A program made the translations under genes and the position numbers. From IMG/VR virus record IMGVR_UViG_3300036715_003906, positions 186,001 through 250,000 of that record: 64,000 bases of DNA; one strand, written 5' to 3'. Positions 20,765-59,340 of this stretch are shown piece by piece. Below the pieces are notes generated by a model, which was given only the letters and a program-made list of their open reading frames with translations, searched no databases and was not told the origin of the DNA. Numbering within the stretch: position 1 is the first letter of the stretch; every line of letters begins with the position of its first letter.

Positions 20765-20891
20765 AGAGGGGGCCCAAGGCGACGTGCCAGGGGCCCGGAT
20801 GATCACTAAGGCCGTTATGCGTGTCGTCGCGCCTGCCTTCAGGGACACGTTGGTGAACCGGGGTGAATGCTCATGACCACCCTGTACACCG

Positions 20892-22275: not shown

Positions 22276-22573
22276 GTTGTCGAACCAGATCGATCCGGCC
22301 CTGGGGCGTCGCCACCCCCTGCCGCACCTCCGCCACCTCCTCCGCCGTCCACCCCGGACGGCGGACCCGCAGCGAGGCGGGTGTTCACCGCCACGATGCC
22401 GATCCGGGGGACCTCGTTGCCGACCCTGGACCCGATCGGACGGGCCAAGGGGTTGTCCGCGGGGAAGGGCTGCTCCTTGCGAAGCAGCGCCTGCTCCCGG
22501 ACGGTCTGGAGGAGCTGGAAGATGCAGGTGTACTGGGCCATCGTGACCCAGGTGTAGCATGACGATTTTTCTG

Positions 22574-22644
22574 TGTGACGCCTGGGGGTCGAACCCAGCT
22601 CCACTGATTCACAGACAGTCCCCGTCCCGGACGGGTAGCGCCAC
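22574..22644 (-). tRNA. tRNA-His(GUG), A73 and no encoded G-1
   Basis: GTGGCGC/GCGTCAC A; loop CT GTG AA. Confidence 0.82.
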
Positions 22645-22647
22645 AGA

Positions 22648-22781
22648 GGCAACGACAAAGAGTGCCGAGACGTTTTCGTGTGCTGCCCTTACACCACCCC
22701 GGGACACTGGACCCGGGGCCTGGACTCGAACCAGGTCCACGACCTTCGATTGGTGTAATCCCAGCGAGGTCATTCGTTGCC
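22648..22781 (-). ncRNA. yrlA: YrlA-type Y RNA (circularly permuted tRNA-like domain)
   Basis: GGCAACGAAT...TTTGTCGTTGCC; order T arm (CCTGG TTCGAGT CCAGG), loop-closed acceptor (CCCCGGG/CCCGGGG), D arm (GTGT AAGGGCA GCAC). Confidence 0.88.
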
Positions 22782-22782
22782 G

Positions 22783-22854
22783 TCAGCCTGGCGAGAATCG
22801 AACTCGCTGCCTCTTCGTCCCCAACGAAGCGCGCTACCGATGCGCTACAGGCTG
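22783..22854 (-). tRNA. tRNA-Pro(GGG)
   Basis: CAGCCTG/CAGGCTG; CTTCG-TT GGG GA-CGAAG. Confidence 0.92.
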
Positions 22855-22875
22855 TAGGACCCCTTGCGGGGCCTG

Positions 22876-22960
22876 CGGAAGAGGGAGGACTCGAACCCCC
22901 GTCCCTTGCGGGACTCATCTCGTTTCCAACGAGCGCCCCGGCCTCCGGGGTTCCTCTTCC
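22876..22960 (-). tRNA. tRNA-Ser(GGA)
   Basis: GGAAGAG/CTCTTCC G73; loop TT GGA AA; GTCCC GCAA GGGAC arm. Confidence 0.88.
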
Positions 22961-23017
22961 ATTGTTGGTGGGACCGGCGCAAGGCCGACCTCGTTCCCCG
23001 GACAAACCGGCACCCTG

Positions 23018-23091
23018 TGCTCACGGTGGGAGTCGAACCCACAAATCCCCGGGTTTGAGTCGGGTGCCTATGCCGGTTCGGCTACGAGAGC
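23018..23091 (-). tRNA. tRNA-Leu(CAA), short variable loop
   Basis: Leu-type D arm; loop CT CAA AC; A73. Confidence 0.8.
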
Positions 23092-23092
23092 A

Positions 23093-23180
23093 TGGTGCAG
23101 TCGGGGGGACTCGAACCCCCATGGCCACAAGGGCCGCCAGTCTCTCAAACTGGTGCGTCTACCGTCTTCGCCACGACTGC
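23093..23180 (-). tRNA. tRNA-Leu(GAG)
   Basis: CCAGT-TT GAG AG-ACTGG; long arm; encoded CCA. Confidence 0.92.
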
Positions 23181-23237
23181 ATGAAGACCGACCGGACGTG
23201 AAGGGTGCGTCTGCCAAGTCCTCCCCACCTCCGGTCG

Positions 23238-23324
23238 TGGTGCGAACGGGGGGCCTCGAACCCCCACGCCCTCAAGGAGCGCCACGTTCTGAGCGTGGTG
23301 CGTCTACCGTTCCGCCACGTTCGC
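23238..23324 (-). tRNA. tRNA-Leu(CAG)
   Basis: CCACG-CT CAG AA-CGTGG; long arm; encoded CCA. Confidence 0.92.
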
Positions 23325-23387
23325 ATTCGGTCCTTGAAGGTTCTGCCCAGGGCCGTGAGGCAAACAGGGGCAGGCCCAAGGGCCCGG

Positions 23388-23460
23388 TCGGATCGGAGGG
23401 GATCGAACCCTCCCGCACCTGTCTGTCAAACAGGGGGCCCCACCAGGGACCGGCGATCCG
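23388..23460 (-). tRNA. tRNA-Val(GAC)
   Basis: CGGATCG/CGATCCG; CCTGT-TT GAC AG-ACAGG. Confidence 0.82.
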
Positions 23461-23608
23461 TTGAGTGCTTCGAGCAGGCCCTCGGGGCTTAGAGGCCCTT
23501 GGCCACGCCAGGGGAGCGACCCCCAGCCCGACACCCATCCTCCCGGCCCATCAGAGGTTCATGACGCCTCCCGAGCTAGGTCTACGAGCGCCGTACCCTC
23601 ACGCACAG

Positions 23609-23690
23609 TCGGGGTAGCAGGAATCGAACCTGCTGTTGGCTTTCGCCTCTTGGTCCCGAACCAAGCGCCATCCCAATAGGCGATACCCCG
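23609..23690 (-). tRNA. tRNA-Pro(CGG) with long variable arm
   Basis: CGGGGTA/TACCCCG; CTTGG-TT CGG GA-CCAAG; GGC GAAA GCC extra arm. Confidence 0.85.
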
Positions 23691-23830
23691 ATGATGCCTC
23701 CCCGTGGGCCAGGTGCGGGAGGCGGCCACCGTCAACGGCACCCTCGCGGGTGTAGCCCCTCGTACCAGGTCTAGTCCCCCAGCTCGTTGCGGCGGGGGTC
23801 CCTGGCCGAGATTGTCCCCTGCGGGACCCG

Positions 23831-23901
23831 TCGGACTCGTGGGGATCGAACCCACCTGACCTGCGTGTGGGGCAGGCGCCCTCCCAGAAGGCGAGAGTCC
23901 G
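23831..23901 (-). tRNA. tRNA-Val(CAC)
   Basis: CGGACTC/GAGTCCG; CCTGC-CC CAC AC-GCAGG. Confidence 0.82.
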
Positions 23902-23902
23902 G

Positions 23903-23982
23903 TGTAGCGAGTGGGGATCGAACCCACCCCGGCAAAGCCAGCGGTTTTACAGACCACCTGTGCCACCAGGCACCTTCGCTAC
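23903..23982 (-). tRNA. tRNA-Tyr(GUA)
   Basis: GTAGCGA/TCGCTAC; loop CT GTA AA; long variable arm. Confidence 0.85.
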
Positions 23983-24014
23983 GTAGCGCCGACCCCCTCG
24001 CGGAGATCGACTCG

Positions 24015-24086
24015 TGGTACGGGTGGGAGTCGAACCCACCCGATCCGTGTATCAGACGGAGCCCCCCAACCAGGGAGAACAGTACC
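24015..24086 (-). tRNA. tRNA-Ile(GAU)
   Basis: TCCGT-CT GAT AC-ACGGA. Confidence 0.82.
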
Positions 24087-24092
24087 GTGTTG

Positions 24093-24256
24093 CGACGACA
24101 AGGGGCGTAGAAGATCGATAGGGATAAGCCCGACCCTCTCCAGGGTTGGAACACGGCAGGGCGGAGCCCCGCCATCCGCCCCCGACCCGAAGGGCAGGTC
24201 GCGGGCAGGTGGCGCGGGGTCTACTACCATTACCATCCTGCACTCCGTGCATTCGT
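24093..24256 (-). ncRNA. Y-RNA-like gene with large multi-hairpin cargo
   Basis: ACGAATGC...CCCTTGTCGT; GTAGTAGA/TCTTCTAC stem; three internal hairpins. Confidence 0.55.
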
Positions 24257-24330
24257 GGGGCCCCTGGGAATCGAACCCAGACCTTCCCGTCTTCAGCGGG
24301 ACGCTTACGTACCAAGTCAGCTTGGACCCC
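24256..24330 (-). tRNA. tRNA-Phe(GAA)
   Basis: GGGGTCC/GGGCCCC; TCCCG-CT GAA GA-CGGGA. Confidence 0.85.
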
Positions 24331-24335
24331 GAACA

Positions 24336-24396
24336 GACCGACAACCCTGTCGCAAGTGGGCTTTTGGTTGGATGTACACCAGCGACGCATTCAGCC
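24336..24396 (-). ncRNA. Minimal Y-RNA-like gene (A/C-rich loop cargo)
   Basis: GGCTGAATGC GTCGCTGGTG TACA...CACTTGCGAC AGG GTTGTCGGTC. Confidence 0.65.
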
Positions 24397-24471
24397 TGGC
24401 GCTCCCAGGGGGTATCGATCCCCCTTCCCTACGCTGAGAACGTAGTATCCTAGCCACTAGACGATGGGAGC
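24397..24471 (-). tRNA. tRNA-Glu(CUC)
   Basis: CTACG-TT CTC AG-CGTAG; T loop ATCGATA; encoded CCA. Confidence 0.88.
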
Positions 24472-24483
24472 ATGAAGAAAACG

Positions 24484-24610
24484 GCGACAAGGAAGCTGCC
24501 GAGACTTTTTTGGCGTCCTACCCTTAGACGATCCCCAGCTTGCGCCGGAGAGGAGGAATCGAACCCCCATTTCCACATGGGCAATGGAGTCCCTGCAAGG
24601 CATTCACCGC
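24484..24610 (-). ncRNA. yrlA: YrlA-type Y RNA (circularly permuted tRNA-like domain)
   Basis: GCGGTGAATG...CTTGTCGC; T arm GGGGG TTCGATT CCTCC, acceptor TCTCCGGC GCAA GCTGGGGA, D arm GTCT AAGGGTA GGAC. Confidence 0.88.
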
Positions 24611-24682
24611 TGGCACCCCGTGTGGGAATCGAACCCGACCCCGGATTTCAATCCAGTGCTCTACCGATTGAGCTACCCCGGC
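24611..24682 (-). pseudogene. tRNA-Phe(GAA)-like with unpaired acceptor stem
   Basis: Canonical D arm and TTGAAA loop, but GCCGGGG cannot pair with ACGGGGT. Confidence 0.6.
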
Positions 24683-24740
24683 GTCGCCACACTGCATCGC
24701 GTTCACCCCCGCGCAGGGGAAGGGCCTGTGGCAAGCCCCT

Positions 24741-26785: not shown

Positions 26786-27077
26786 GACACTACTACGCAG
26801 TGCCCCCCCGGGAATCAAAAGCTGGGTCGTGTACATTTTGCAAAATGCCGACGGGCTCCTCTACACGGGGATCACGAACGACCTCCCGCGCCGGGTCGGG
26901 CGACACAATCGGGGCCAGGGGGCCCGGTACACGAAGGGCCGCGGGCCCTGGTCCGTGGCTTACACGGAGCCCGCCGAGGGGCACGGGGCGGCGCTCCGAC
27001 GGGAGCGGGCGATCAAGAAGCTCAGCCGGGCCCAGAAGCGGAGGATGATCACTTCTCCTGGGGGAGCGACGCCATGA
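26784..27077 (+). CDS. GIY-YIG nuclease (YazA/UPF0213-like)
   Basis: VYIL..ADG.LYTGITND..RR...HN.G.GARYTKGRGP, ALRRE.AIKKLSR. Confidence 0.85.
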   Translation: MTLLRSAPPGIKSWVVYILQNADGLLYTGITNDLPRRVGRHNRGQGARYTKGRGPWSVAYTEPAEGHGAALRRERAIKKLSRAQKRRMITSPGGATP

Positions 27078-29544
27078 GGTCGAAGCCCTCCCGCTGGGCC
27101 GCTTCCTCGCGGGCGACCCGGAGGGCGTAGGCCACGCGGGAGGAGGCGATCTGGTGGTAGACGGGGTCACGCTCGATCCCGACGAAGGAGAAGCCCTCCT
27201 CCGTTGCCGCGACCAGGGTGGATCCCGAGCCCGAGAAGGGGTCGAGAACCGTGCCCCCGGGGGGCGTGATGAGCCGGCAGAAGTACCGCATGAGCTTCAC
27301 GGGCTTCGTGGTGGGGTGGTGGTTCTTGCTCTTGCTCCCCTGCGTCTCCTCCCACTCGGGCTCGGGGCAGGTGCAGTGCGGCTGCCCGAACTTGACGTGG
27401 CCGCAGAGCTGACACCGACGGTTGCTCTGGGTCGAGACCGTCTGCTCCACCAGCGTGTGCTGGGCCCTCGCCTCGACGTCCTCCTCGAACCCCTGGTTGC
27501 GCTCCCGGGTCGTGATCTTGCCGCAGTAGAAGAAGGGGACGTCCACCTCGGGCTCGAAGGTCTGGAAAAAGCGGGAGGCGCCGCCCCCATCACCGTAATC
27601 GACACCTGCGTACCCGGGAACGCCGGGGAAGTCCCCCTTGAAGCTACGCTGGGGCTGCGTGCGAGCCAGGGCCCGCGGACCCCCACTGCTCTTTTCCACA
27701 CCGCTCTGCTCGTCGAGGGCGCGGACGGGGCACCCCTCCTCGCACTCGTAGACGTCCACCTGCTCGTACGGCTTCCGCTCGGACGTGTAGGGCTTCCCCT
27801 CCCCGCCGTAGTCGTACCGGAGCTTCCCCTCGTACCGGTTCATGAGGGGCACGGGCGCCACCCGCTCCCCGACCTTCCGGCACGTCGGGCTGTGGGATAG
27901 GACCAGGTGCGCCGGCCAGCGACCCGACGTGGACGTAGGCTGCGCCTGTGCGGGATTCTCGGACCCCTCGCGGTAAGGGGACCAGAGCTTGCCCGACCCG
28001 CCGACCGGGGGCTCCGTCGTGCTGACCCGGCAGGCGTCGATGTGGAGGGCGCCCGTGCCGTGCTCCTTGACGTTCGCCGCCACGGTCCCCCGGAGCGGCT
28101 TTCGGATGAGCCACCAGTCCTCGACCGCCGGCTTGAGGGATGTCCCCCACCCCTCCCACTCCCCGGCCCGCTCGGGCGCCTTCCCCTTCGTGAGCGCCTT
28201 CGCCACGTTCAGGGACTTGGGAAAGCCGCTGTTCCCCGTGATGAAAACCTTGCCCTTGCGACGGGCCACGAAGGCCCCCTTGGGGACGCGGAGGCACCAG
28301 ACGTCCCCGGCATAGAACTCGGGCGGAGAACGGAGGTTGAAGGTCGACAGCGTGGTGTCAGCGTGCCGCGTGACCCCCACGTAACCCCCCTCGCGCGCCG
28401 CCCGGGCTGTGTTGTGCCCGCGCCACCCCACCAGGGAGAGGAGCGTCGTGAACCACTCCCGATCCTCGGGGGACTTCTGCTCCAGGGACATGCTGCCGCC
28501 CCCCCGCTTCAGCGAGGGCTTCGACGTGGTGCCATCTCCCCGGACCGCGGCCCGGAGGAAGGCACGTTTCTCCCCGAGGGTCATGCCCCAGAGCAGCTCA
28601 TAGGTCGGGTGCTTGTCCGGGAGATCCCGACGAATACGCTCCGCCATGTCTCCCGTGAAGGACCAGGTGATCATCTGGTAAGGACGCGGCCCTTCGTGCC
28701 GGGACTCGTAGGTCCGATCGTAGGCGTACCGGCTGTGCTTGCCCCCCGCGTCCCCAAGGAGTGCGTCAATCTCGGCCACCTTGTCCGGGTTGACCGAGGA
28801 CTGGTAGATGCGAACGCCGCGCCCCTTGCGGTCGTACCCACCCTCCGTCCAGACCCACCCGAGCAGAGAAGCGTACTCCTCACCTCCGATCCCAGGGCCC
28901 TCGTGAAGCCCCGCGAGCGGGAGGCGTTTCGGGGACGAACGGGATACCTCGGAGACCTCTGCCACGCGGTACGCGCTCCACCGCTTCCAGAGGGAGGTCC
29001 TGTGCCAGACCCGATGGTTGGGCGTCAGGAGCTGATCGGTGTCGGCGTTGCGCAGGACCACGAGATCACCCTCCCAGGGCGCGCGGAAGGTCTCCTCGAC
29101 AGCCGCGAGAGTGATCGCTTCGGTCCCGGGGTCCCACTGGGCCACCCTGTCCCCCACTCGCACATCCAAACCCTTGATCCACCCCGCAGGGGTCAGCACC
29201 TCGACGTCATCCGTCAGGCACCCGAAGACGTGGCCGATCCGGTCGCGGATCTCGAAGCCCGCGTTCTCCAGGGCGAGAGCCGTCCAGTGCGAGGTCCGAG
29301 GCAGGGCCCAGAACAGGCCATGGGCGCCGGGCTTCAGGATGCGGAAGCACTCCCGGGCGACCTCCTCGAGGAAGGCCACGAACCCCTCCCGGGCCGAGCA
29401 AGAACTGTCCCCGAAGGAGTCCCACTCCTGACCCATGAAGGAGATACCGGCTGGCTATGGGGGATCCGTGACGATGGAGTCCACCGAACCCGTCGGGAGG
29501 CGACGCAGAACGTCGAGGCAATCCCCAAGGATAACCTTGTTCAT
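27049..29544 (-). CDS. N4/N6 DNA methyltransferase with intein; in-frame TAG in motif IV
   Basis: GDCLDVL..L...SVDSIVTDPP*PAGISFMG; HPTTKP..LM; VLDPFSGSGST. Confidence 0.85.
28231..29220 (-). mobile_element. Intein (330 aa) with LAGLIDADG endonuclease
   Basis: CLTDDVEVLT..GW start; LLGWVWTEG and FLRAAVRGDG; VWCLRVP...ITGN/S end. Confidence 0.92.
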
Positions 29545-57364: not shown

Positions 57365-57625
57365 TTGATCATGTAGACCTTGCGCGCCTTCCTCCCCGAG
57401 GGACGACAAGAGGTGCAACGTCCGGGTGGCCCCTCGAAAGGGGCCGGGCCGCGGAGTCAGACTTTCTCGTCTTTGGGGCGATAGAATCGCAGGGGTTGGA
57501 TGATCGTGTAGACCTAGCGGGCATCCACCGGGGACGCATTCCCGGGCAGCAAGGTGATTGCTGAGTCAGCTCTCCCCGACGTACCAGAGGCCGCCGGTCT
57601 GACTCAGAGCAGGTCGCCGACCGCG
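57365..57625 (-). ncRNA. Tandem Y-RNA-like units directly downstream of ro60
   Basis: Repeated CTGACTC, CTTG, GGAA(T/G) and AGGTCTACAYGATCA motifs, matching the array Y RNAs. Confidence 0.6.
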
Positions 57626-59340
57626 TTTTCGATCATGGCGGTCCAGGACGTCTCCATCCCGGCCTGGAAGGTCGCCGCCACCTCGAAGACCGTGTCGCTG
57701 AACCCCCCCATGTTCAGGATGTCGTCCCGGCTCGGGGCCTGGGTCGTCGTGTTCGGCGACAAGTCCATGCAGATGAGCTTGGCCTTGGGGTTGCGCACCT
57801 TGACCTTGTCCCACTCGCTCATGGTCGTCGTCTTGCCCCCCGACCGGCTCGCGAAGTAGCTGGCATAGGCCGCGGCCCGCGCCGAGTCCACCCACGACTC
57901 GTTGTCCGAGACGTACCAGACGAGATCCGGCGTGAAGCCCATGCTGTTGATCGTCGCCATCGGGGCCGAGCAGTTCGTCCCCCCGCCCGGGACCTCCTTG
58001 AGCTTCTGGGCGTTCGTCATGATCGAGTCCCGCGGGTTGAACGTGTACCCGACCCGGCTGACCTCGGCGAAGGGCAGGACCATCGCCTCCGGGTTCTTCC
58101 GCAGGATGGACGCCGCCACGAGGGCCGCCACGTCCAGGCACGAAACCTTGGTCGTGTGCGTCTCGACCTTGCCCGTCTTCGGGTTCACCCGCGTCCCCGT
58201 CACCGGCGACGACATGGAGCCCGACACGTCCGGGAAGACCGCGACCTTCCCGTTGATCACCGGGATGTTGTCCGTCGAGATCTCGACCGCGTCCTGGAGG
58301 GCGTTACGGATCGCCTGGGGCACGTCCGTCGCGTTCAGGTACGTGACCAGGAGCTGGTACGGCATGACCCGCGCCTTCTTGATCAGCTCCTTGTCCCCGA
58401 GCTTGTCCGCGATCTTCCGCACCGCCGCGTCGCTCTTGAAGACGCCCTTCTTCTGAAACACGTTCAAGTGCTGCCGGATCTGCTGCCAGGAGGACCCGTT
58501 GGTCGCCAGCTCGATCCACTGGTCCGGCGTGAGCGCCAGGCCCTCCAGCATCTCGAAGGGGGCCTTCGGGAGCGGCTTGCCCTCCGGGCTTGCCCGGAAC
58601 GCCTCGTACTGCTGCACGACTTCGGGGCACACGTCGAGAACCGAGATCTCGCGGCCCCCGAACTTCGCCTTCTCCTTGCCGAGCAGGTAGCCGTAGAGCG
58701 CCGCCGCCTGGGCCGTCTGCGGCGACGGGTGCGCCAGCGACAGGATATCCCCGAGCGACGGGTCATTGCCCACGGACGCGAAGAACAGCCCCTCCGCCGT
58801 CCGGGACGCCATCCACGACGCCACCAGCCGCCTCGGGGCCGACCCGAGCGACGTTCGACCCGCCTGCCCGGACCGGACCACCTGCACGAAGTTCCGCACC
58901 ATCTTCCCGTTGTCGCAGACCTGGGGGAAGGCCGCCGTCAGTAGCCGCGACAGCTTCGTGACCTCGGCGTTGTGCGCCCGGGCCTCGGCCTTCTTGCCCG
59001 CCTTGTGCGCCGCCTCCTCGGCCTTCGCCTCCCGCGCCAGCTCCCCGGCCAGGTGCCCGAGCAAGTAGGCCGGCATGTCCTTCATGAACCCCCGCGTGCG
59101 GCTGTAAACTGCCACCTGGGCCACGAACTCCGGCGGGACCTCGTTCACCAGCTTCTTCACCTGGTCGAGCTGCGCCTGCGCGCTCGCGTAGTAGGTGTGG
59201 TTGAAGCAGCCCGTGGCAGCGATCTGCGCCAGGGCCTCCTTCGAGGAGAGCGCGTATGCCTTTCCCCCCGCCTGGTTCGTCACCCGTCCCGTGCTCACGC
59301 CCGCGCCCTTGTTCGCCCCGAACAACGTCTTCGATGCCAT
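57604..59340 (-). CDS. rsr: Ro60/Rsr (TROVE + vWA) RNA-binding protein
   Basis: NQAGG.AY, TGCFN.TYY, GFMKDMP, MVRNFVQ, PDVSGSM, GGGTNCS, VSDNESW, GGFSD.VF. Confidence 0.95.
   Translation of the reverse strand: MASKTLFGANKGAGVSTGRVTNQAGGKAYALSSKEALAQIAATGCFNHTYYASAQAQLDQVKKLVNEVPPEFVAQVAVYSRTRGFMKDMPAYLLGHLAGELAREAKAEEAAHKAGKKAEARAHNAEVTKLSRLLTAAFPQVCDNGKMVRNFVQVVRSGQAGRTSLGSAPRRLVASWMASRTAEGLFFASVGNDPSLGDILSLAHPSPQTAQAAALYGYLLGKEKAKFGGREISVLDVCPEVVQQYEAFRASPEGKPLPKAPFEMLEGLALTPDQWIELATNGSSWQQIRQHLNVFQKKGVFKSDAAVRKIADKLGDKELIKKARVMPYQLLVTYLNATDVPQAIRNALQDAVEISTDNIPVINGKVAVFPDVSGSMSSPVTGTRVNPKTGKVETHTTKVSCLDVAALVAASILRKNPEAMVLPFAEVSRVGYTFNPRDSIMTNAQKLKEVPGGGTNCSAPMATINSMGFTPDLVWYVSDNESWVDSARAAAYASYFASRSGGKTTTMSEWDKVKVRNPKAKLICMDLSPNTTTQAPSRDDILNMGGFSDTVFEVAATFQAGMETSWTAMIENAVGDLL

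What the first reader, a model, noticed from the sequence alone, without database searches (positions are those of the whole stretch)
22648..24610. Two YrlA-type circularly permuted tRNA mimics
Seen: at 22648-22781 and 24484-24610 the T arm comes before a loop-closed acceptor stem (one capped by GCAA), followed by the D arm. Both return through AAAA-GTCTCGGCA to the terminal helix. Established: this is the YrlA architecture. They anchor the assignment of the other scaffold-sharing loci and would be miscalled as pseudo-tRNAs.
Basis: partly seen in the sequence, partly recalled or inferred. Interest (0 to 1): 0.68.

Follow-up and report, generated by a model that had tools for sequence, protein, structure and literature searches.

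The report
Two phage YrlA-type Y RNAs
Two small RNA genes in the tRNA gene cluster of a very large phage are real members of the known YrlA class of tRNA-mimicking Y RNAs, and the phage also carries the gene for their partner protein Ro60/Rsr, so this is a new example of a known system with an unusual gene layout.

Summary
Both 22646-22781 (el1) and 24478-24610 (el2) run terminal helix P1, internal loop, helix P2, variable region, T arm, loop-closed acceptor stem (GCAA cap in el2), D arm, A-rich linker, GUCUCGGCA, P1.

Rfam YrlA matches both end to end but below its gathering score (29.7 and 18.9 bits against 69). The accepted Bxz1 YrlA and many rsr-adjacent bacterial copies also fall below it.

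Three further tests support YrlA membership:
- A model built only from el1 and el2 retrieves bona fide rsr-adjacent YrlAs at 50-74 bits.
- A model built from 48 such YrlAs, window excluded, scores el1 97.4 bits (E 1e-26) and el2 80.4 bits (E 1e-21).
- All five helices covary.

The phage encodes a full-length Rsr at 57604-59340 on the same strand. The Pfam TROVE scan had missed it.

Three or four more RNAs in the array share the P1/P2 scaffold. All six fill inter-tRNA spacers exactly. Other Rsr-encoding jumbo phages carry homologues; a complete Rsr-less relative carries none.

Verdict: new members of a known kind. The unusual points are the position in a tRNA array 33-35 kb from rsr and the paralogue family. 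Expression and Rsr binding are untested.

The parts
22646..22781 (-). el1: YrlA-type Y RNA gene. Order: P1, CGAAUG loop, P2, variable region beginning UUAC, T arm, closed acceptor stem whose loop reads UCCAGUGU, D arm, A-rich linker, GUCUCGGCA, UUUGUCG, P1'.
   Evidence: Rfam YrlA 29.7 bits over 1-114. R2 97.4 bits, E 1.3e-26. Helices checked.
24478..24610 (-). el2: second YrlA-type Y RNA gene. Same order as el1; acceptor stem of 8 bp capped by GCAA; UGAAUG in place of CGAAUG; variable region begins CUCC.
   Evidence: Rfam YrlA 18.9 bits over 1-114. R2 80.4 bits, E 1.4e-21..
57604..59340 (-). Phage rsr gene: Ro60/Rsr orthologue of 578 aa, the presumed protein partner of the Y RNAs.
   Evidence: Pfam vWA_Ro60 50.7 bits (cut-off 27.7); TROVE only 15.8 bits. 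HMM of 74 Rsr (73 from YrlA loci plus Bxz1 gp220): E 3e-193 over 515 of 527 positions. PDB 2NVO D. radiodurans Rsr E 5.7e-14. 45-47% identity end to end to bacterial Rsr.
22782..22854 (-). tRNA-Pro(ggg) directly upstream of el1 (0-nt gap). Its 3' processing would define the el1 5' end.
22573..22644 (-). tRNA-His directly downstream of el1 (1-nt gap). RNase P cleavage here would define the el1 3' end.
24611..24684 (-). Aberrant tRNA (ARAGORN gives a 2-nt anticodon) directly upstream of el2 (0-nt gap).
24397..24471 (-). tRNA-Glu downstream of el2 (6-nt gap).
19282..19385 (-). Scaffold-sharing paralogue. P1/GAAUGAC/P2/GGACUCCA and AAAACGUCU...CUCCUUGUUG are kept; the cargo is two hairpins (one T-like, one GCAA-capped) and there is no D arm.
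   Evidence: R2 32.1 bits, E 2.6e-7. R1 22.3 bits..
18118..18242 (-). Scaffold-sharing paralogue whose P2 encloses a non-permuted tRNA-Ile(gat)-like cloverleaf (18147-18218).
   Evidence: R2 31.4 bits, E 4.2e-7. ARAGORN and Rfam tRNA 34.3 bits..
19140..19207 (-). Short scaffold-only paralogue (YrlB-like): P1, AAAUG, P2 ending GGACUACA, CCCCUUGUCG.
   Evidence: R2 26.0 bits, E 1.7e-5. Fold z-score -3.4..
24331..24396 (-). Possible short paralogue: GGCUGAAUG ... GGGUUGUCGGUC with an inner helix. It lacks the GGACUMCA motif.
   Evidence: Motif scan only and cofold. Not reported by R2 at E<=1.

Best explanation
el1 and el2 are genes for YrlA-class bacterial-type Y RNAs. Each has a terminal two-helix stem (P1, P2) around a conserved internal loop (5' YGAAUG, 3' YUUGUCG), which is the Ro60/Rsr-binding module. 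That stem carries a circularly permuted tRNA-like domain: variable arm, T arm, loop-closed acceptor stem, D arm.

They belong to a family of five or six paralogues with the same scaffold and different cargo. All sit as exact spacers between tRNA genes in the tRNA/tmRNA array of a huge phage (a 251-kb record that CheckV rates 53% complete).

Proposed mechanism, inferred rather than shown. The array is transcribed as long precursors. RNase P and the tRNA 3'-end nucleases that trim the flanking tRNAs release each Y RNA with defined ends. The stem then binds the phage's own Rsr ring (gene at 57604-59340), while the tRNA-like domain stabilises the RNA and/or recruits tRNA-binding factors. By analogy with D. 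radiodurans, S. Typhimurium and Thermus phage phiLo, the RNP tethers host PNPase to remodel RNA decay during infection.

Shown here: the architecture, homology to YrlA, covariation, the Rsr gene, and co-occurrence of the two across phages. Not shown: expression, processing, Rsr binding, and any effect on the host.
For: - Architecture: present in both elements.
- Rfam YrlA: end-to-end alignment of both, keeping the conserved AUG, CUA-type and U.G..G positions.
- Reciprocity: model R1, built from el1 and el2 only, finds 34 further full-length matches at E<=1e-4 in other loci, including Rfam-passing YrlAs at 50-74 bits.
- Independent model: R2, built from 48 YrlAs of rsr loci with the window excluded, gives 97.4 and 80.4 bits. 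tRNA-tRNA junctions reach at most 23.5 bits, and only locally.
- Covariation on 36 sequences: 98% of cells paired; 29 of 32 pairs changed on both sides; slid controls 38-58% paired; 0 of 500 shuffles reach the observed values.
- Motif link to rsr: the pattern CGAAUG..GGUUCGANNCC..CUUGUCG hits at least 120 bacterial loci, and 81 of the 120 fetched hold a TROVE-like ORF within 8 kb.
- Phage Rsr.
- Co-occurrence: three other jumbo-phage records with a 42-45% identical Rsr all carry R1/R2 matches. In G006/G007 these lie about 1 kb from rsr. G005 has two short scaffold RNAs just upstream of rsr and two YrlA-type copies in a tRNA array about 19 kb away.
- Negative control: relatives found through another protein, including a complete 447,761-bp genome, have neither Rsr nor full-length matches.
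- Position: each of the six window paralogues fills a tRNA-tRNA spacer with gaps of 0-6 nt.
- Published precedent: Rsr-YrlA partnership, tRNA-type modification and RNase P cleavage (Chen et al. 2014, PMC4201824); a phage Ro60 binding phage Y-like RNAs and host PNPase (PMC12135203).
Against: - Rfam scores (29.7 and 18.9 bits) are far below the gathering score of 69. Sub-threshold YrlA hits ring in 13 of 14 control genomes through their tRNA-like part.
- The elements lie 33-35 kb from rsr, not within the 4 kb used by Chen et al.
- The 5' motif is inexact. el1 has AACGAAUG. el2 has GGUGAAUG, the only U-G at a pair that is C-G in 34 of 36 sequences.
- el1 lacks a Levitt-type 15:48 pair (A with A).
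- R2's training set was selected and aligned by R1, so the two models are not fully independent.
- No near-identical orthologue was found in the viral or metagenome collections.
Confidence: 0.82

Rival explanations
1. They are decayed tRNA-tRNA junctions: the 3' half of one tRNA plus the 5' half of the next. On this reading they are pseudo-tRNA debris of a fast-evolving array with no function of their own.
For: Adjacent tRNAs do mimic the T arm - acceptor - D arm order. R1 and R2 give local hits of this kind in the window and in G002. Chen et al. warn about dimeric tRNAs. The el1 acceptor loop still reads UCCA, and the family consensus loop reads ACCA, as expected of such an origin.
Against: - Junction hits are local only (model positions 44-100, at most 23.5 bits in the window), whereas el1 and el2 match globally at 80-97 bits.
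- The flanks form P1/P2 with the conserved Rsr-type loop rather than D, anticodon or T arms.
- ARAGORN calls no tRNA there.
- The same scaffold recurs in 3-4 paralogues, in other Rsr-encoding phages at 40-46% GC, and in bacterial rsr loci, with compensatory changes.
Confidence: 0.03
2. The P1/P2 scaffold is a processing or stability stem for spacer RNAs of the tRNA operon, for example an RNase III-type site. On this reading it is unrelated to Rsr, and the resemblance to YrlA is convergent.
For: All six elements are exact inter-tRNA spacers. One scaffold encloses an ordinary-looking tRNA, as leader-trailer stems do. The distance to rsr is 33-41 kb.
Against: The internal-loop sequences (GAAUG, GGACUMCA, GUCU, CYUUGUCG) match the consensus of rsr-linked YrlAs position by position. 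The scaffold occurs in all four Rsr-encoding phage records examined (G000, G005, G006, G007) and not in the Rsr-less relatives.
Confidence: 0.05
3. They are genuine Y RNAs that act mainly on host components: host Rsr, or tRNA-modifying, tRNA-processing or tRNA-targeting defence enzymes. They would serve as decoys or sponges rather than through the phage Rsr.
For: The tRNA-like domain keeps U8, A14, G18-G19, U54-U55-C56, A58 and A21. [quoted passage not shown] The position in a tRNA array suggests a link with tRNA biology. Jumbo phages carry RNA-repair sets against host RNases.
Against: The phage carries its own full-length Rsr, and Rsr and scaffold RNAs co-occur across phages. There is no anticodon loop to decoy anticodon nucleases. 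The host is unknown, so host Rsr could not be examined.
Confidence: 0.08
4. They are circularly permuted tRNA genes that are cut and rejoined, or cut in the acceptor loop, to give a working tRNA.
For: The domain order is permuted. The el1 acceptor loop reads UCCA, so RNase P cleavage could expose a CCA-like end. M. smegmatis YrlA is cut by RNase P and receives CCA.
Against: There is no anticodon stem-loop. The position is taken by the long P2/P1 helix with the conserved loop. el2 has a tight GCAA cap and no CCA.
Confidence: 0.02

Closest known systems
YrlA (Rfam RF02553) of S. Typhimurium, M. smegmatis and more than 250 other bacteria (Chen et al. 2014, PMC4201824)
   Same: - Terminal stem with a 5' CGAAUG-type motif and a 3' CUUGUCG.
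- YUAY at the start of the variable arm (el1).
- Order T arm, closed acceptor stem, D arm, with tRNA-invariant nucleotides.
- An Rsr gene in the same genome on the same strand.
- Tandem paralogues, as in many bacterial rsr loci.
   Different: - Below the Rfam gathering score.
- 33-35 kb from rsr instead of within 4 kb.
- Embedded as spacers in a tRNA array.
- Longer variable arm (20-22 nt).
- el2 has UGAA for CGAA and CUCC for YUAY.
Mycobacteriophage Bxz1/ET08 YrlA with Ro-like gp220
   Same: A phage-encoded Ro60 orthologue together with a YrlA-type RNA. Its Rfam score is also sub-threshold (32.5 bits, local).
   Different: In Bxz1 the RNA lies about 200 nt upstream of the Ro gene, outside the tRNA array. 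Its stem motif (GCCGAGAG) is further from the consensus than that of el1.
Thermus phage phiLo Ro60 with Yrl1 and Yrl2 (PMC12135203)
   Same: A phage Ro60 that binds phage-encoded Y-like RNAs with a CGAA-containing loop and assembles with host PNPase. This is the functional model adopted here.
   Different: Yrl1 and Yrl2 lie directly upstream of the Ro60 gene. They are described as stem-bulge-stem RNAs, with no tRNA-like domain or tRNA-array context reported.
S. Typhimurium YrlB and D. radiodurans Yrn1
   Same: YrlB is a short Rsr-bound RNA that shares the 5' motif, like the scaffold-only paralogues 19140-19207 and 24331-24396. Yrn1 has a T-arm-like hairpin.
   Different: Yrn1 has a different arm order and a separate origin. 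These RNAs compare with the other paralogues, not with el1 and el2.
Dimeric tRNAs and tRNA-tRNA junctions
   Same: The local order is the same: T arm, paired acceptor strands, D arm.
   Different: They have no P1/P2 scaffold, and the acceptor strands are joined by a CCA-spacer rather than a short closed loop. They score only locally with R2.

Membership tests
YrlA-class Y RNA (RF02553; Chen et al. 2014) | tRNA-like module in permuted order: variable arm, T arm, loop-closed acceptor stem, D arm, with tRNA-invariant nucleotides (UUCGA T loop; GG and flanking A's in the D loop; U8) | tested here: met
   Both elements have it. All five helices covary across 36 sequences. The 15:48 pair is A:U in el2 but A:A in el1.
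YrlA-class Y RNA (RF02553; Chen et al. 2014) | 5' GNCGAAN0-1G motif (putative Rsr contact) in a terminal stem formed with the 3' end | tested here: inconclusive
   el1 reads AACGAAUG: the first G becomes A, and the pair is kept as A-U. el2 reads GGUGAAUG: C becomes U, and the pair is kept as U-G. The 3' partner UUGUCG is exact in both. Homologues in other Rsr phages show the same UGAA and CAAA variants.
YrlA-class Y RNA (RF02553; Chen et al. 2014) | YUAY at the start of the variable arm | tested here: inconclusive
   el1 has UUAC, which fits. el2 has CUCC, with A replaced by C.
YrlA-class Y RNA (RF02553; Chen et al. 2014) | Operational criterion: score at or above the Rfam gathering score (69 bits) | tested here: not met
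   el1 scores 29.7 and el2 18.9 bits, both over model positions 1-114. I treat this as a detection threshold, not a defining property. The accepted Bxz1 YrlA scores 32.5 bits, and rsr-adjacent bacterial paralogues score 30-68 bits.
YrlA-class Y RNA (RF02553; Chen et al. 2014) | Reciprocal covariance-model homology with rsr-adjacent YrlAs | tested here: met
   R1 (el1 and el2 only) finds Rfam-passing YrlAs at 50-74 bits. R2 (48 rsr-linked YrlAs, window excluded) scores el1 97.4 and el2 80.4 bits.
YrlA-class Y RNA (RF02553; Chen et al. 2014) | Operational criterion: encoded within about 4 kb of rsr on the same strand | tested here: not met
   Same strand, but 33.0 kb (el2) and 34.8 kb (el1) from rsr at 57604-59340. 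No R2 hit lies within 4 kb of rsr. In the related Rsr phage G005 the YrlA-type copies are also about 19 kb from rsr, in a tRNA array.
YrlA-class Y RNA (RF02553; Chen et al. 2014) | A Ro60/Rsr orthologue encoded by the same genome | tested here: met
   The 578-aa ORF 57604-59340 (-): vWA_Ro60 50.7 bits, custom Rsr HMM E 3e-193, PDB 2NVO E 5.7e-14.
YrlA-class Y RNA (RF02553; Chen et al. 2014) | Expressed as a stable small RNA, bound by Rsr, carrying pseudouridine and dihydrouridine | not testable with these tools
No wet-lab data exist.
Canonical tRNA or pseudo-tRNA | Cloverleaf in standard order with an anticodon arm and an open acceptor stem | tested here: not met
   ARAGORN makes no call. The Rfam tRNA model gives only a chimeric 28.8-bit hit spanning el2 and its neighbour.

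The most novel reading that the evidence does not exclude
The phage uses the Rsr-binding stem as a modular handle. A tRNA-punctuated array yields a set of five or six Rsr-loadable RNAs with different cargo: two permuted tRNA mimics, one scaffold enclosing an ordinary-order tRNA-Ile-like cloverleaf, and hairpin-only forms. The phage Rsr RNP, and through it host PNPase, could then be directed at or gated by several tRNA-related partners. Alternatively, maturation of an embedded tRNA could be coupled to Rsr. This layout (Y RNAs interleaved with tRNAs, far from rsr) recurs in at least one other Rsr-encoding jumbo phage and in two Pyrinomonadaceae MAG contigs. It may therefore be an undescribed phage-type organisation of the Ro/Y system.
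Probability: 0.2. Interest if true: 0.7.

Novelty: new member of a known kind. Interest (0 to 1): 0.45.

Why it matters
Ro60/Rsr with Y RNAs is a conserved RNA-surveillance system whose role in phages is barely explored. Only one phage RNP has been characterised, that of phiLo.

This locus offers four things:
- It adds a very large phage carrying both Rsr and a whole family of Y RNAs.
- It shows that standard scans miss both partners: Pfam TROVE for the protein and the Rfam gathering score for the RNAs.
- It shows that Y RNA genes can sit inside tRNA arrays, tens of kilobases from rsr, where the '4 kb from rsr' search rule would never find them.
- It supplies natural scaffold and cargo variants for testing what the tRNA-like domain does.

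For annotation, these spacers should be labelled Y RNA (YrlA-like), not pseudo-tRNA or intergenic.

Tried and rejected
- Pfam TROVE six-frame search of the 251-kb record and of relatives gave no match. For the window's own genome this was a false negative: the gene scores only 15.8 bits on TROVE. I first took it to mean 'no Rsr' and withdrew that reading.
- RtcB (PF01139) is absent from the record at the tool's sensitivity.
- The genome search with RF02553 on the window's own genome truncated the two elements to partial hits. It was less useful than cmscan on the window.
- The viral-contig pattern GTCTCGGCA..TTGTCG gave 118 or more unspecific hits, which I did not follow.
- The T-loop/D-loop/GTCTCGG pattern gave one chance hit in viral contigs, a pair of adjacent tRNAs. 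It gave 13 chance hits in metagenome contigs, none matching R1. So no near-identical orthologues are held.
- ORF 15312-16520 has no viral relatives.
- Relatives found through the papain-like protease ORF (G001-G004) lack both Rsr and scaffold RNAs. A putative full-length R2 hit in G002 resolved to a tRNA junction.
- phages-collection megablast: no match.
- No supplementary files are held for Chen et al., and two reviews are not held.
- The promoter/terminator scan of the array is uninformative: 0 promoters, and terminator-like sites at or below expectation.
- Host assignment was not achieved.
Full report
**Setting.** The window is bases 186001-250000 of a 251,474-bp IMG/VR virus record that CheckV rates 53% complete. 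Its GC content is 0.66-0.71. Between 14.3 and 25.7 kb, on the minus strand, it carries a tmRNA gene and 32 tRNA genes; a 33rd tRNA lies on the plus strand at 62035-62110. A relative found through a shared protease ORF is a complete 447,761-bp genome with terminal repeats. The source is therefore probably a phage of the 450-kb class; that is an inference.

**Observation.** Both elements lie on the minus strand.
- An outer helix P1 of 7-8 bp.
- An internal loop with 5' GAAUG and 3' UUGUCG.
- A 20-22-nt variable region.
- A T arm of 5 bp with loop UUCGAGU (el1) or UUCGAUU (el2).
- An acceptor-like stem closed by a loop: 7 bp with an 8-nt loop in el1, 8 bp with GCAA in el2.
- U8, then a 4-bp D arm with loop AAGGGCA (el1) or AAGGGUA (el2).
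- An A-rich 8-nt linker back to P2.

The two copies differ by compensatory changes in every helix. The 9-mer alone is not unusual in this GC-rich DNA, but the ensemble is, as shown below. Each element fills the spacer between two tRNA genes: Pro and His for el1, an aberrant tRNA and Glu for el2, with gaps of 0-6 nt.

**Is it YrlA?** Rfam's YrlA model aligns both elements over all 114 positions, but at 29.7 and 18.9 bits against a gathering score of 69. Weak YrlA hits also occur in 13 of 14 control genomes through their tRNA-like part. That result alone does not decide, so I ran three further tests.

1. *Calibration of the Rfam score.* The accepted YrlA of mycobacteriophage Bxz1 lies about 200 nt upstream of the Ro-like gp220. 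It scores only 32.5 bits, and only locally. Rsr-adjacent bacterial paralogues score anywhere from 30 to 75 bits.
2. *Reciprocity.*
   - The exact motif set CGAAUG..GGUUCGANNCC..CUUGUCG hits at least 120 bacterial loci, often two or three times in tandem.
   - 81 of the 120 fetched hold a TROVE-like ORF within the 8-kb locus, and many pass the Rfam threshold at 70-86 bits.
   - Model R1, built from el1 and el2 alone, retrieves these bona fide YrlAs full length at 50-74 bits.
3. *An outside model.* R2 was built from 48 YrlAs of rsr loci in bacteria and other phages, without the window.
   - It scores el1 97.4 bits (E 1.3e-26) and el2 80.4 bits (E 1.4e-21) in the 64-kb window.
   - tRNA-tRNA junctions, the known false positive, reach at most 23.5 bits, and only over model positions 44-100.
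   - R2's members were picked and aligned by R1, so it is not fully independent. The members are, however, independently validated by Rfam and by rsr adjacency.

On the 36-sequence alignment, 98% of cells pair and 29 of 32 pairs change on both sides. Sliding the partners drops pairing to 38-58%.

**The partner protein.** The Pfam TROVE search of the record had found nothing. A profile built from 74 Rsr proteins (73 from the YrlA loci plus Bxz1 gp220) then matched a minus-strand ORF at 57604-59340 with E 3e-193, over 515 of 527 positions.
- Pfam confirms vWA_Ro60 at 50.7 bits (cut-off 27.7). TROVE reaches only 15.8 bits (cut-off 23), which explains the miss.
- The protein matches D. radiodurans Rsr (PDB 2NVO) at E 5.7e-14 over residues 19-501.
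- It is 45-47% identical end to end to bacterial Rsr proteins.

So the phage encodes Rsr on the same strand, 33.0 kb from el2 and 34.8 kb from el1. No R2 match lies within 4 kb of it.

**Co-occurrence.** Three other jumbo-phage records (320, 195 and 253 kb; GC about 0.40-0.46 at the RNA loci) encode Rsr proteins 42-45% identical to this one. All of them carry homologues of el1 and el2.
- G006 and G007 have a YrlA-type RNA and short scaffold RNAs about 1 kb downstream of rsr on the same strand.
- G005 has two short scaffold RNAs 33-150 nt upstream of rsr.
- G005 also has two YrlA-type copies (80-89 bits with R2) about 19 kb away inside a tRNA array. One is an exact spacer between tRNA-Phe and tRNA-Cys, and one has a GCAA-capped acceptor stem like el2.
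- Relatives reached through the protease ORF, including the complete 447-kb genome, have neither Rsr nor full-length matches, only tRNA-junction hits.

**The wider family in the window.** A scan of the whole 251-kb record for RAAUG...UUGUYG with paired flanks finds five loci. All are on the minus strand in the array; shuffles give a mean of 0.4. R2 independently reports three more loci:
- 19282-19385 at 32.1 bits;
- 18118-18242 at 31.4 bits;
- 19140-19207 at 26.0 bits.

All keep P1, GAAUG(A)C, P2 ending in GGAC, UMCA, then GUCY...CYCYUUGUCG. They differ in cargo: two hairpins; a non-permuted tRNA-Ile-like cloverleaf; almost nothing, as in YrlB. A sixth locus, 24331-24396, is a weaker candidate. 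All six are exact inter-tRNA spacers.

**Mechanism.**
- *Shown:* architecture, homology, covariation, the Rsr gene, co-occurrence, and the spacer position.
- *Inferred from published work on the family:* Rsr binds the stem, mainly its 5' strand. Y RNA tethers Rsr to PNPase. YrlA is modified by TruB and DusA and can be cut by RNase P (PMC4201824). A phage Ro60 binds phage Y-like RNAs and host PNPase (PMC12135203).
- *Inferred from position:* RNase P and the tRNA 3'-end nucleases acting on the flanking tRNAs would release each Y RNA with defined ends. No promoter-like site and no excess of terminator-like sites lie inside the array; that is weak evidence.
- The el1 acceptor loop reads UCCA and the family consensus reads ACCA. 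This fits an origin from a tRNA-tRNA junction and possible RNase P/CCA processing, as in M. smegmatis.

**Departures from the textbook YrlA.**
- Scores below the Rfam gathering score.
- A distance of 33-35 kb from rsr.
- An inexact 5' motif: AACGAAUG in el1 and GGUGAAUG in el2, with both changes keeping the base pair.
- CUCC in place of YUAY in el2.
- No 15:48 pair in el1.

I treat the Rfam threshold and the 4-kb rule as detection criteria, since accepted members fail the first and phage G005 fails the second.

**Novelty.** Phage-encoded Ro60 with Y-like RNAs is already known in mycobacteriophages, CcrColossus, phage G and phiLo. TROVE proteins with a tRNA-like partner have also been noted in a few jumbo phages. 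These two RNAs are therefore new members of a known kind. I did not find described, in the papers held, the placement of Y RNA genes as spacers in tRNA arrays far from rsr, or a paralogue family with varied cargo. The same layout occurs in G005 and in two Pyrinomonadaceae MAG contigs that combine a tRNA array, interleaved YrlAs and rsr.

**Limits.** The host is unknown. About 47% of the genome is missing. No close orthologues of el1 or el2 are held.

Noticed in passing
window 57604-59340 (-): A full-length Rsr/Ro60 orthologue that the Pfam TROVE six-frame scan missed (15.8 bits, cut-off 23). It is caught by vWA_Ro60 and by a bacterial Rsr profile (E 3e-193). TROVE-based surveys probably undercount phage Rsr.
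   Followed up: yes
window 18118-18242 (-): A Y-RNA scaffold (P1, GAAUGAC, 8-bp P2) encloses a tRNA-Ile(gat)-like cloverleaf in ordinary order, with a short D loop and one A-C mismatch in the acceptor stem. If RNase P and RNase Z excised the tRNA, a two-piece scaffold duplex would remain.
   Followed up: partly
window 19282-19385, 19140-19207, 24331-24396 (-): Three more inter-tRNA spacers share the Rsr-type scaffold with non-tRNA cargo: two hairpins, including a GCAA-capped one, or almost none (YrlB-like).
   Followed up: partly
window 22704-22711 (-), acceptor loop of el1: The loop closing the acceptor-like stem reads UCCAGUGU, that is discriminator, CCA and a 4-nt 'leader'. The consensus loop of 48 rsr-linked YrlAs is ACCAA. 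This is a footprint of a tRNA-tRNA junction origin and a possible RNase P site.
   Followed up: partly
window 24087-24254 (-): A 168-nt spacer that starts with GAAUG directly after a tRNA and ends with CCCCUUGUCGUCGC. It may be a seventh scaffold RNA with a large GC-rich insert. P1 pairing is poor, and neither model reports it.
   Followed up: no
window 18930-19064, 19458-19581, 20765-20890, 23691-23829, 23325-23607 (-): Other 125-285-nt inter-tRNA spacers fold into GC-rich multi-hairpin structures with no family match. 23388-23461 gives a sub-threshold tRNA-Sec-like hit (32.9 bits) that ARAGORN does not call.
   Followed up: no
window 18853-18929 and 24611-24684 (-): Two aberrant tRNAs by ARAGORN: one with a 4-nt 'anticodon' (tcgg, 8-nt loop) and one with a 2-nt 'anticodon' (6-nt loop, Phe-like GAA context). 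They may be frameshift-type or decayed tRNAs.
   Followed up: no
window 14303-14654 (-): A phage-encoded tmRNA (116.8 bits) with tag peptide ANDNVALVALAA. It might help assign the host.
   Followed up: no
window 18346-18825 (-) and 19685-20653 (-): Protein genes interrupt the tRNA array: a weak HNH endonuclease match and a papain-family cysteine protease (Peptidase_C1, E 2.8e-13). The protease is conserved at 45-64% identity in four other large viral contigs and at 36-37% in two more.
   Followed up: partly
L158 and L159 (Pyrinomonadaceae MAG contigs DASRCS010000171.1, JBGSWW010000032.1): Dense tRNA arrays (11-16 tRNAs by ARAGORN) are directly followed by, or interleaved with, YrlA genes and an rsr gene. 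L159 has a YrlA as an exact spacer between tRNA-Met and tRNA-Asn. These look like phage-derived regions with the same layout as the window.
   Followed up: partly
L127:1501-1664 (G003, 78-kb viral contig related through the protease ORF): A 164-nt element with two outer helices, T arm, closed acceptor stem and a D-like arm, but without the GAAUG/UUGUCG motifs and with no Rsr in the fragment (R1 30.2 bits). It may be a different permuted tRNA mimic.
   Followed up: no
window 62304-63425 (+) and 27049-29436 (-): A DUF4419 protein (E 1.8e-56) lies near rsr. A 795-aa protein has a C-terminal N6/N4 DNA methylase domain.
   Followed up: no
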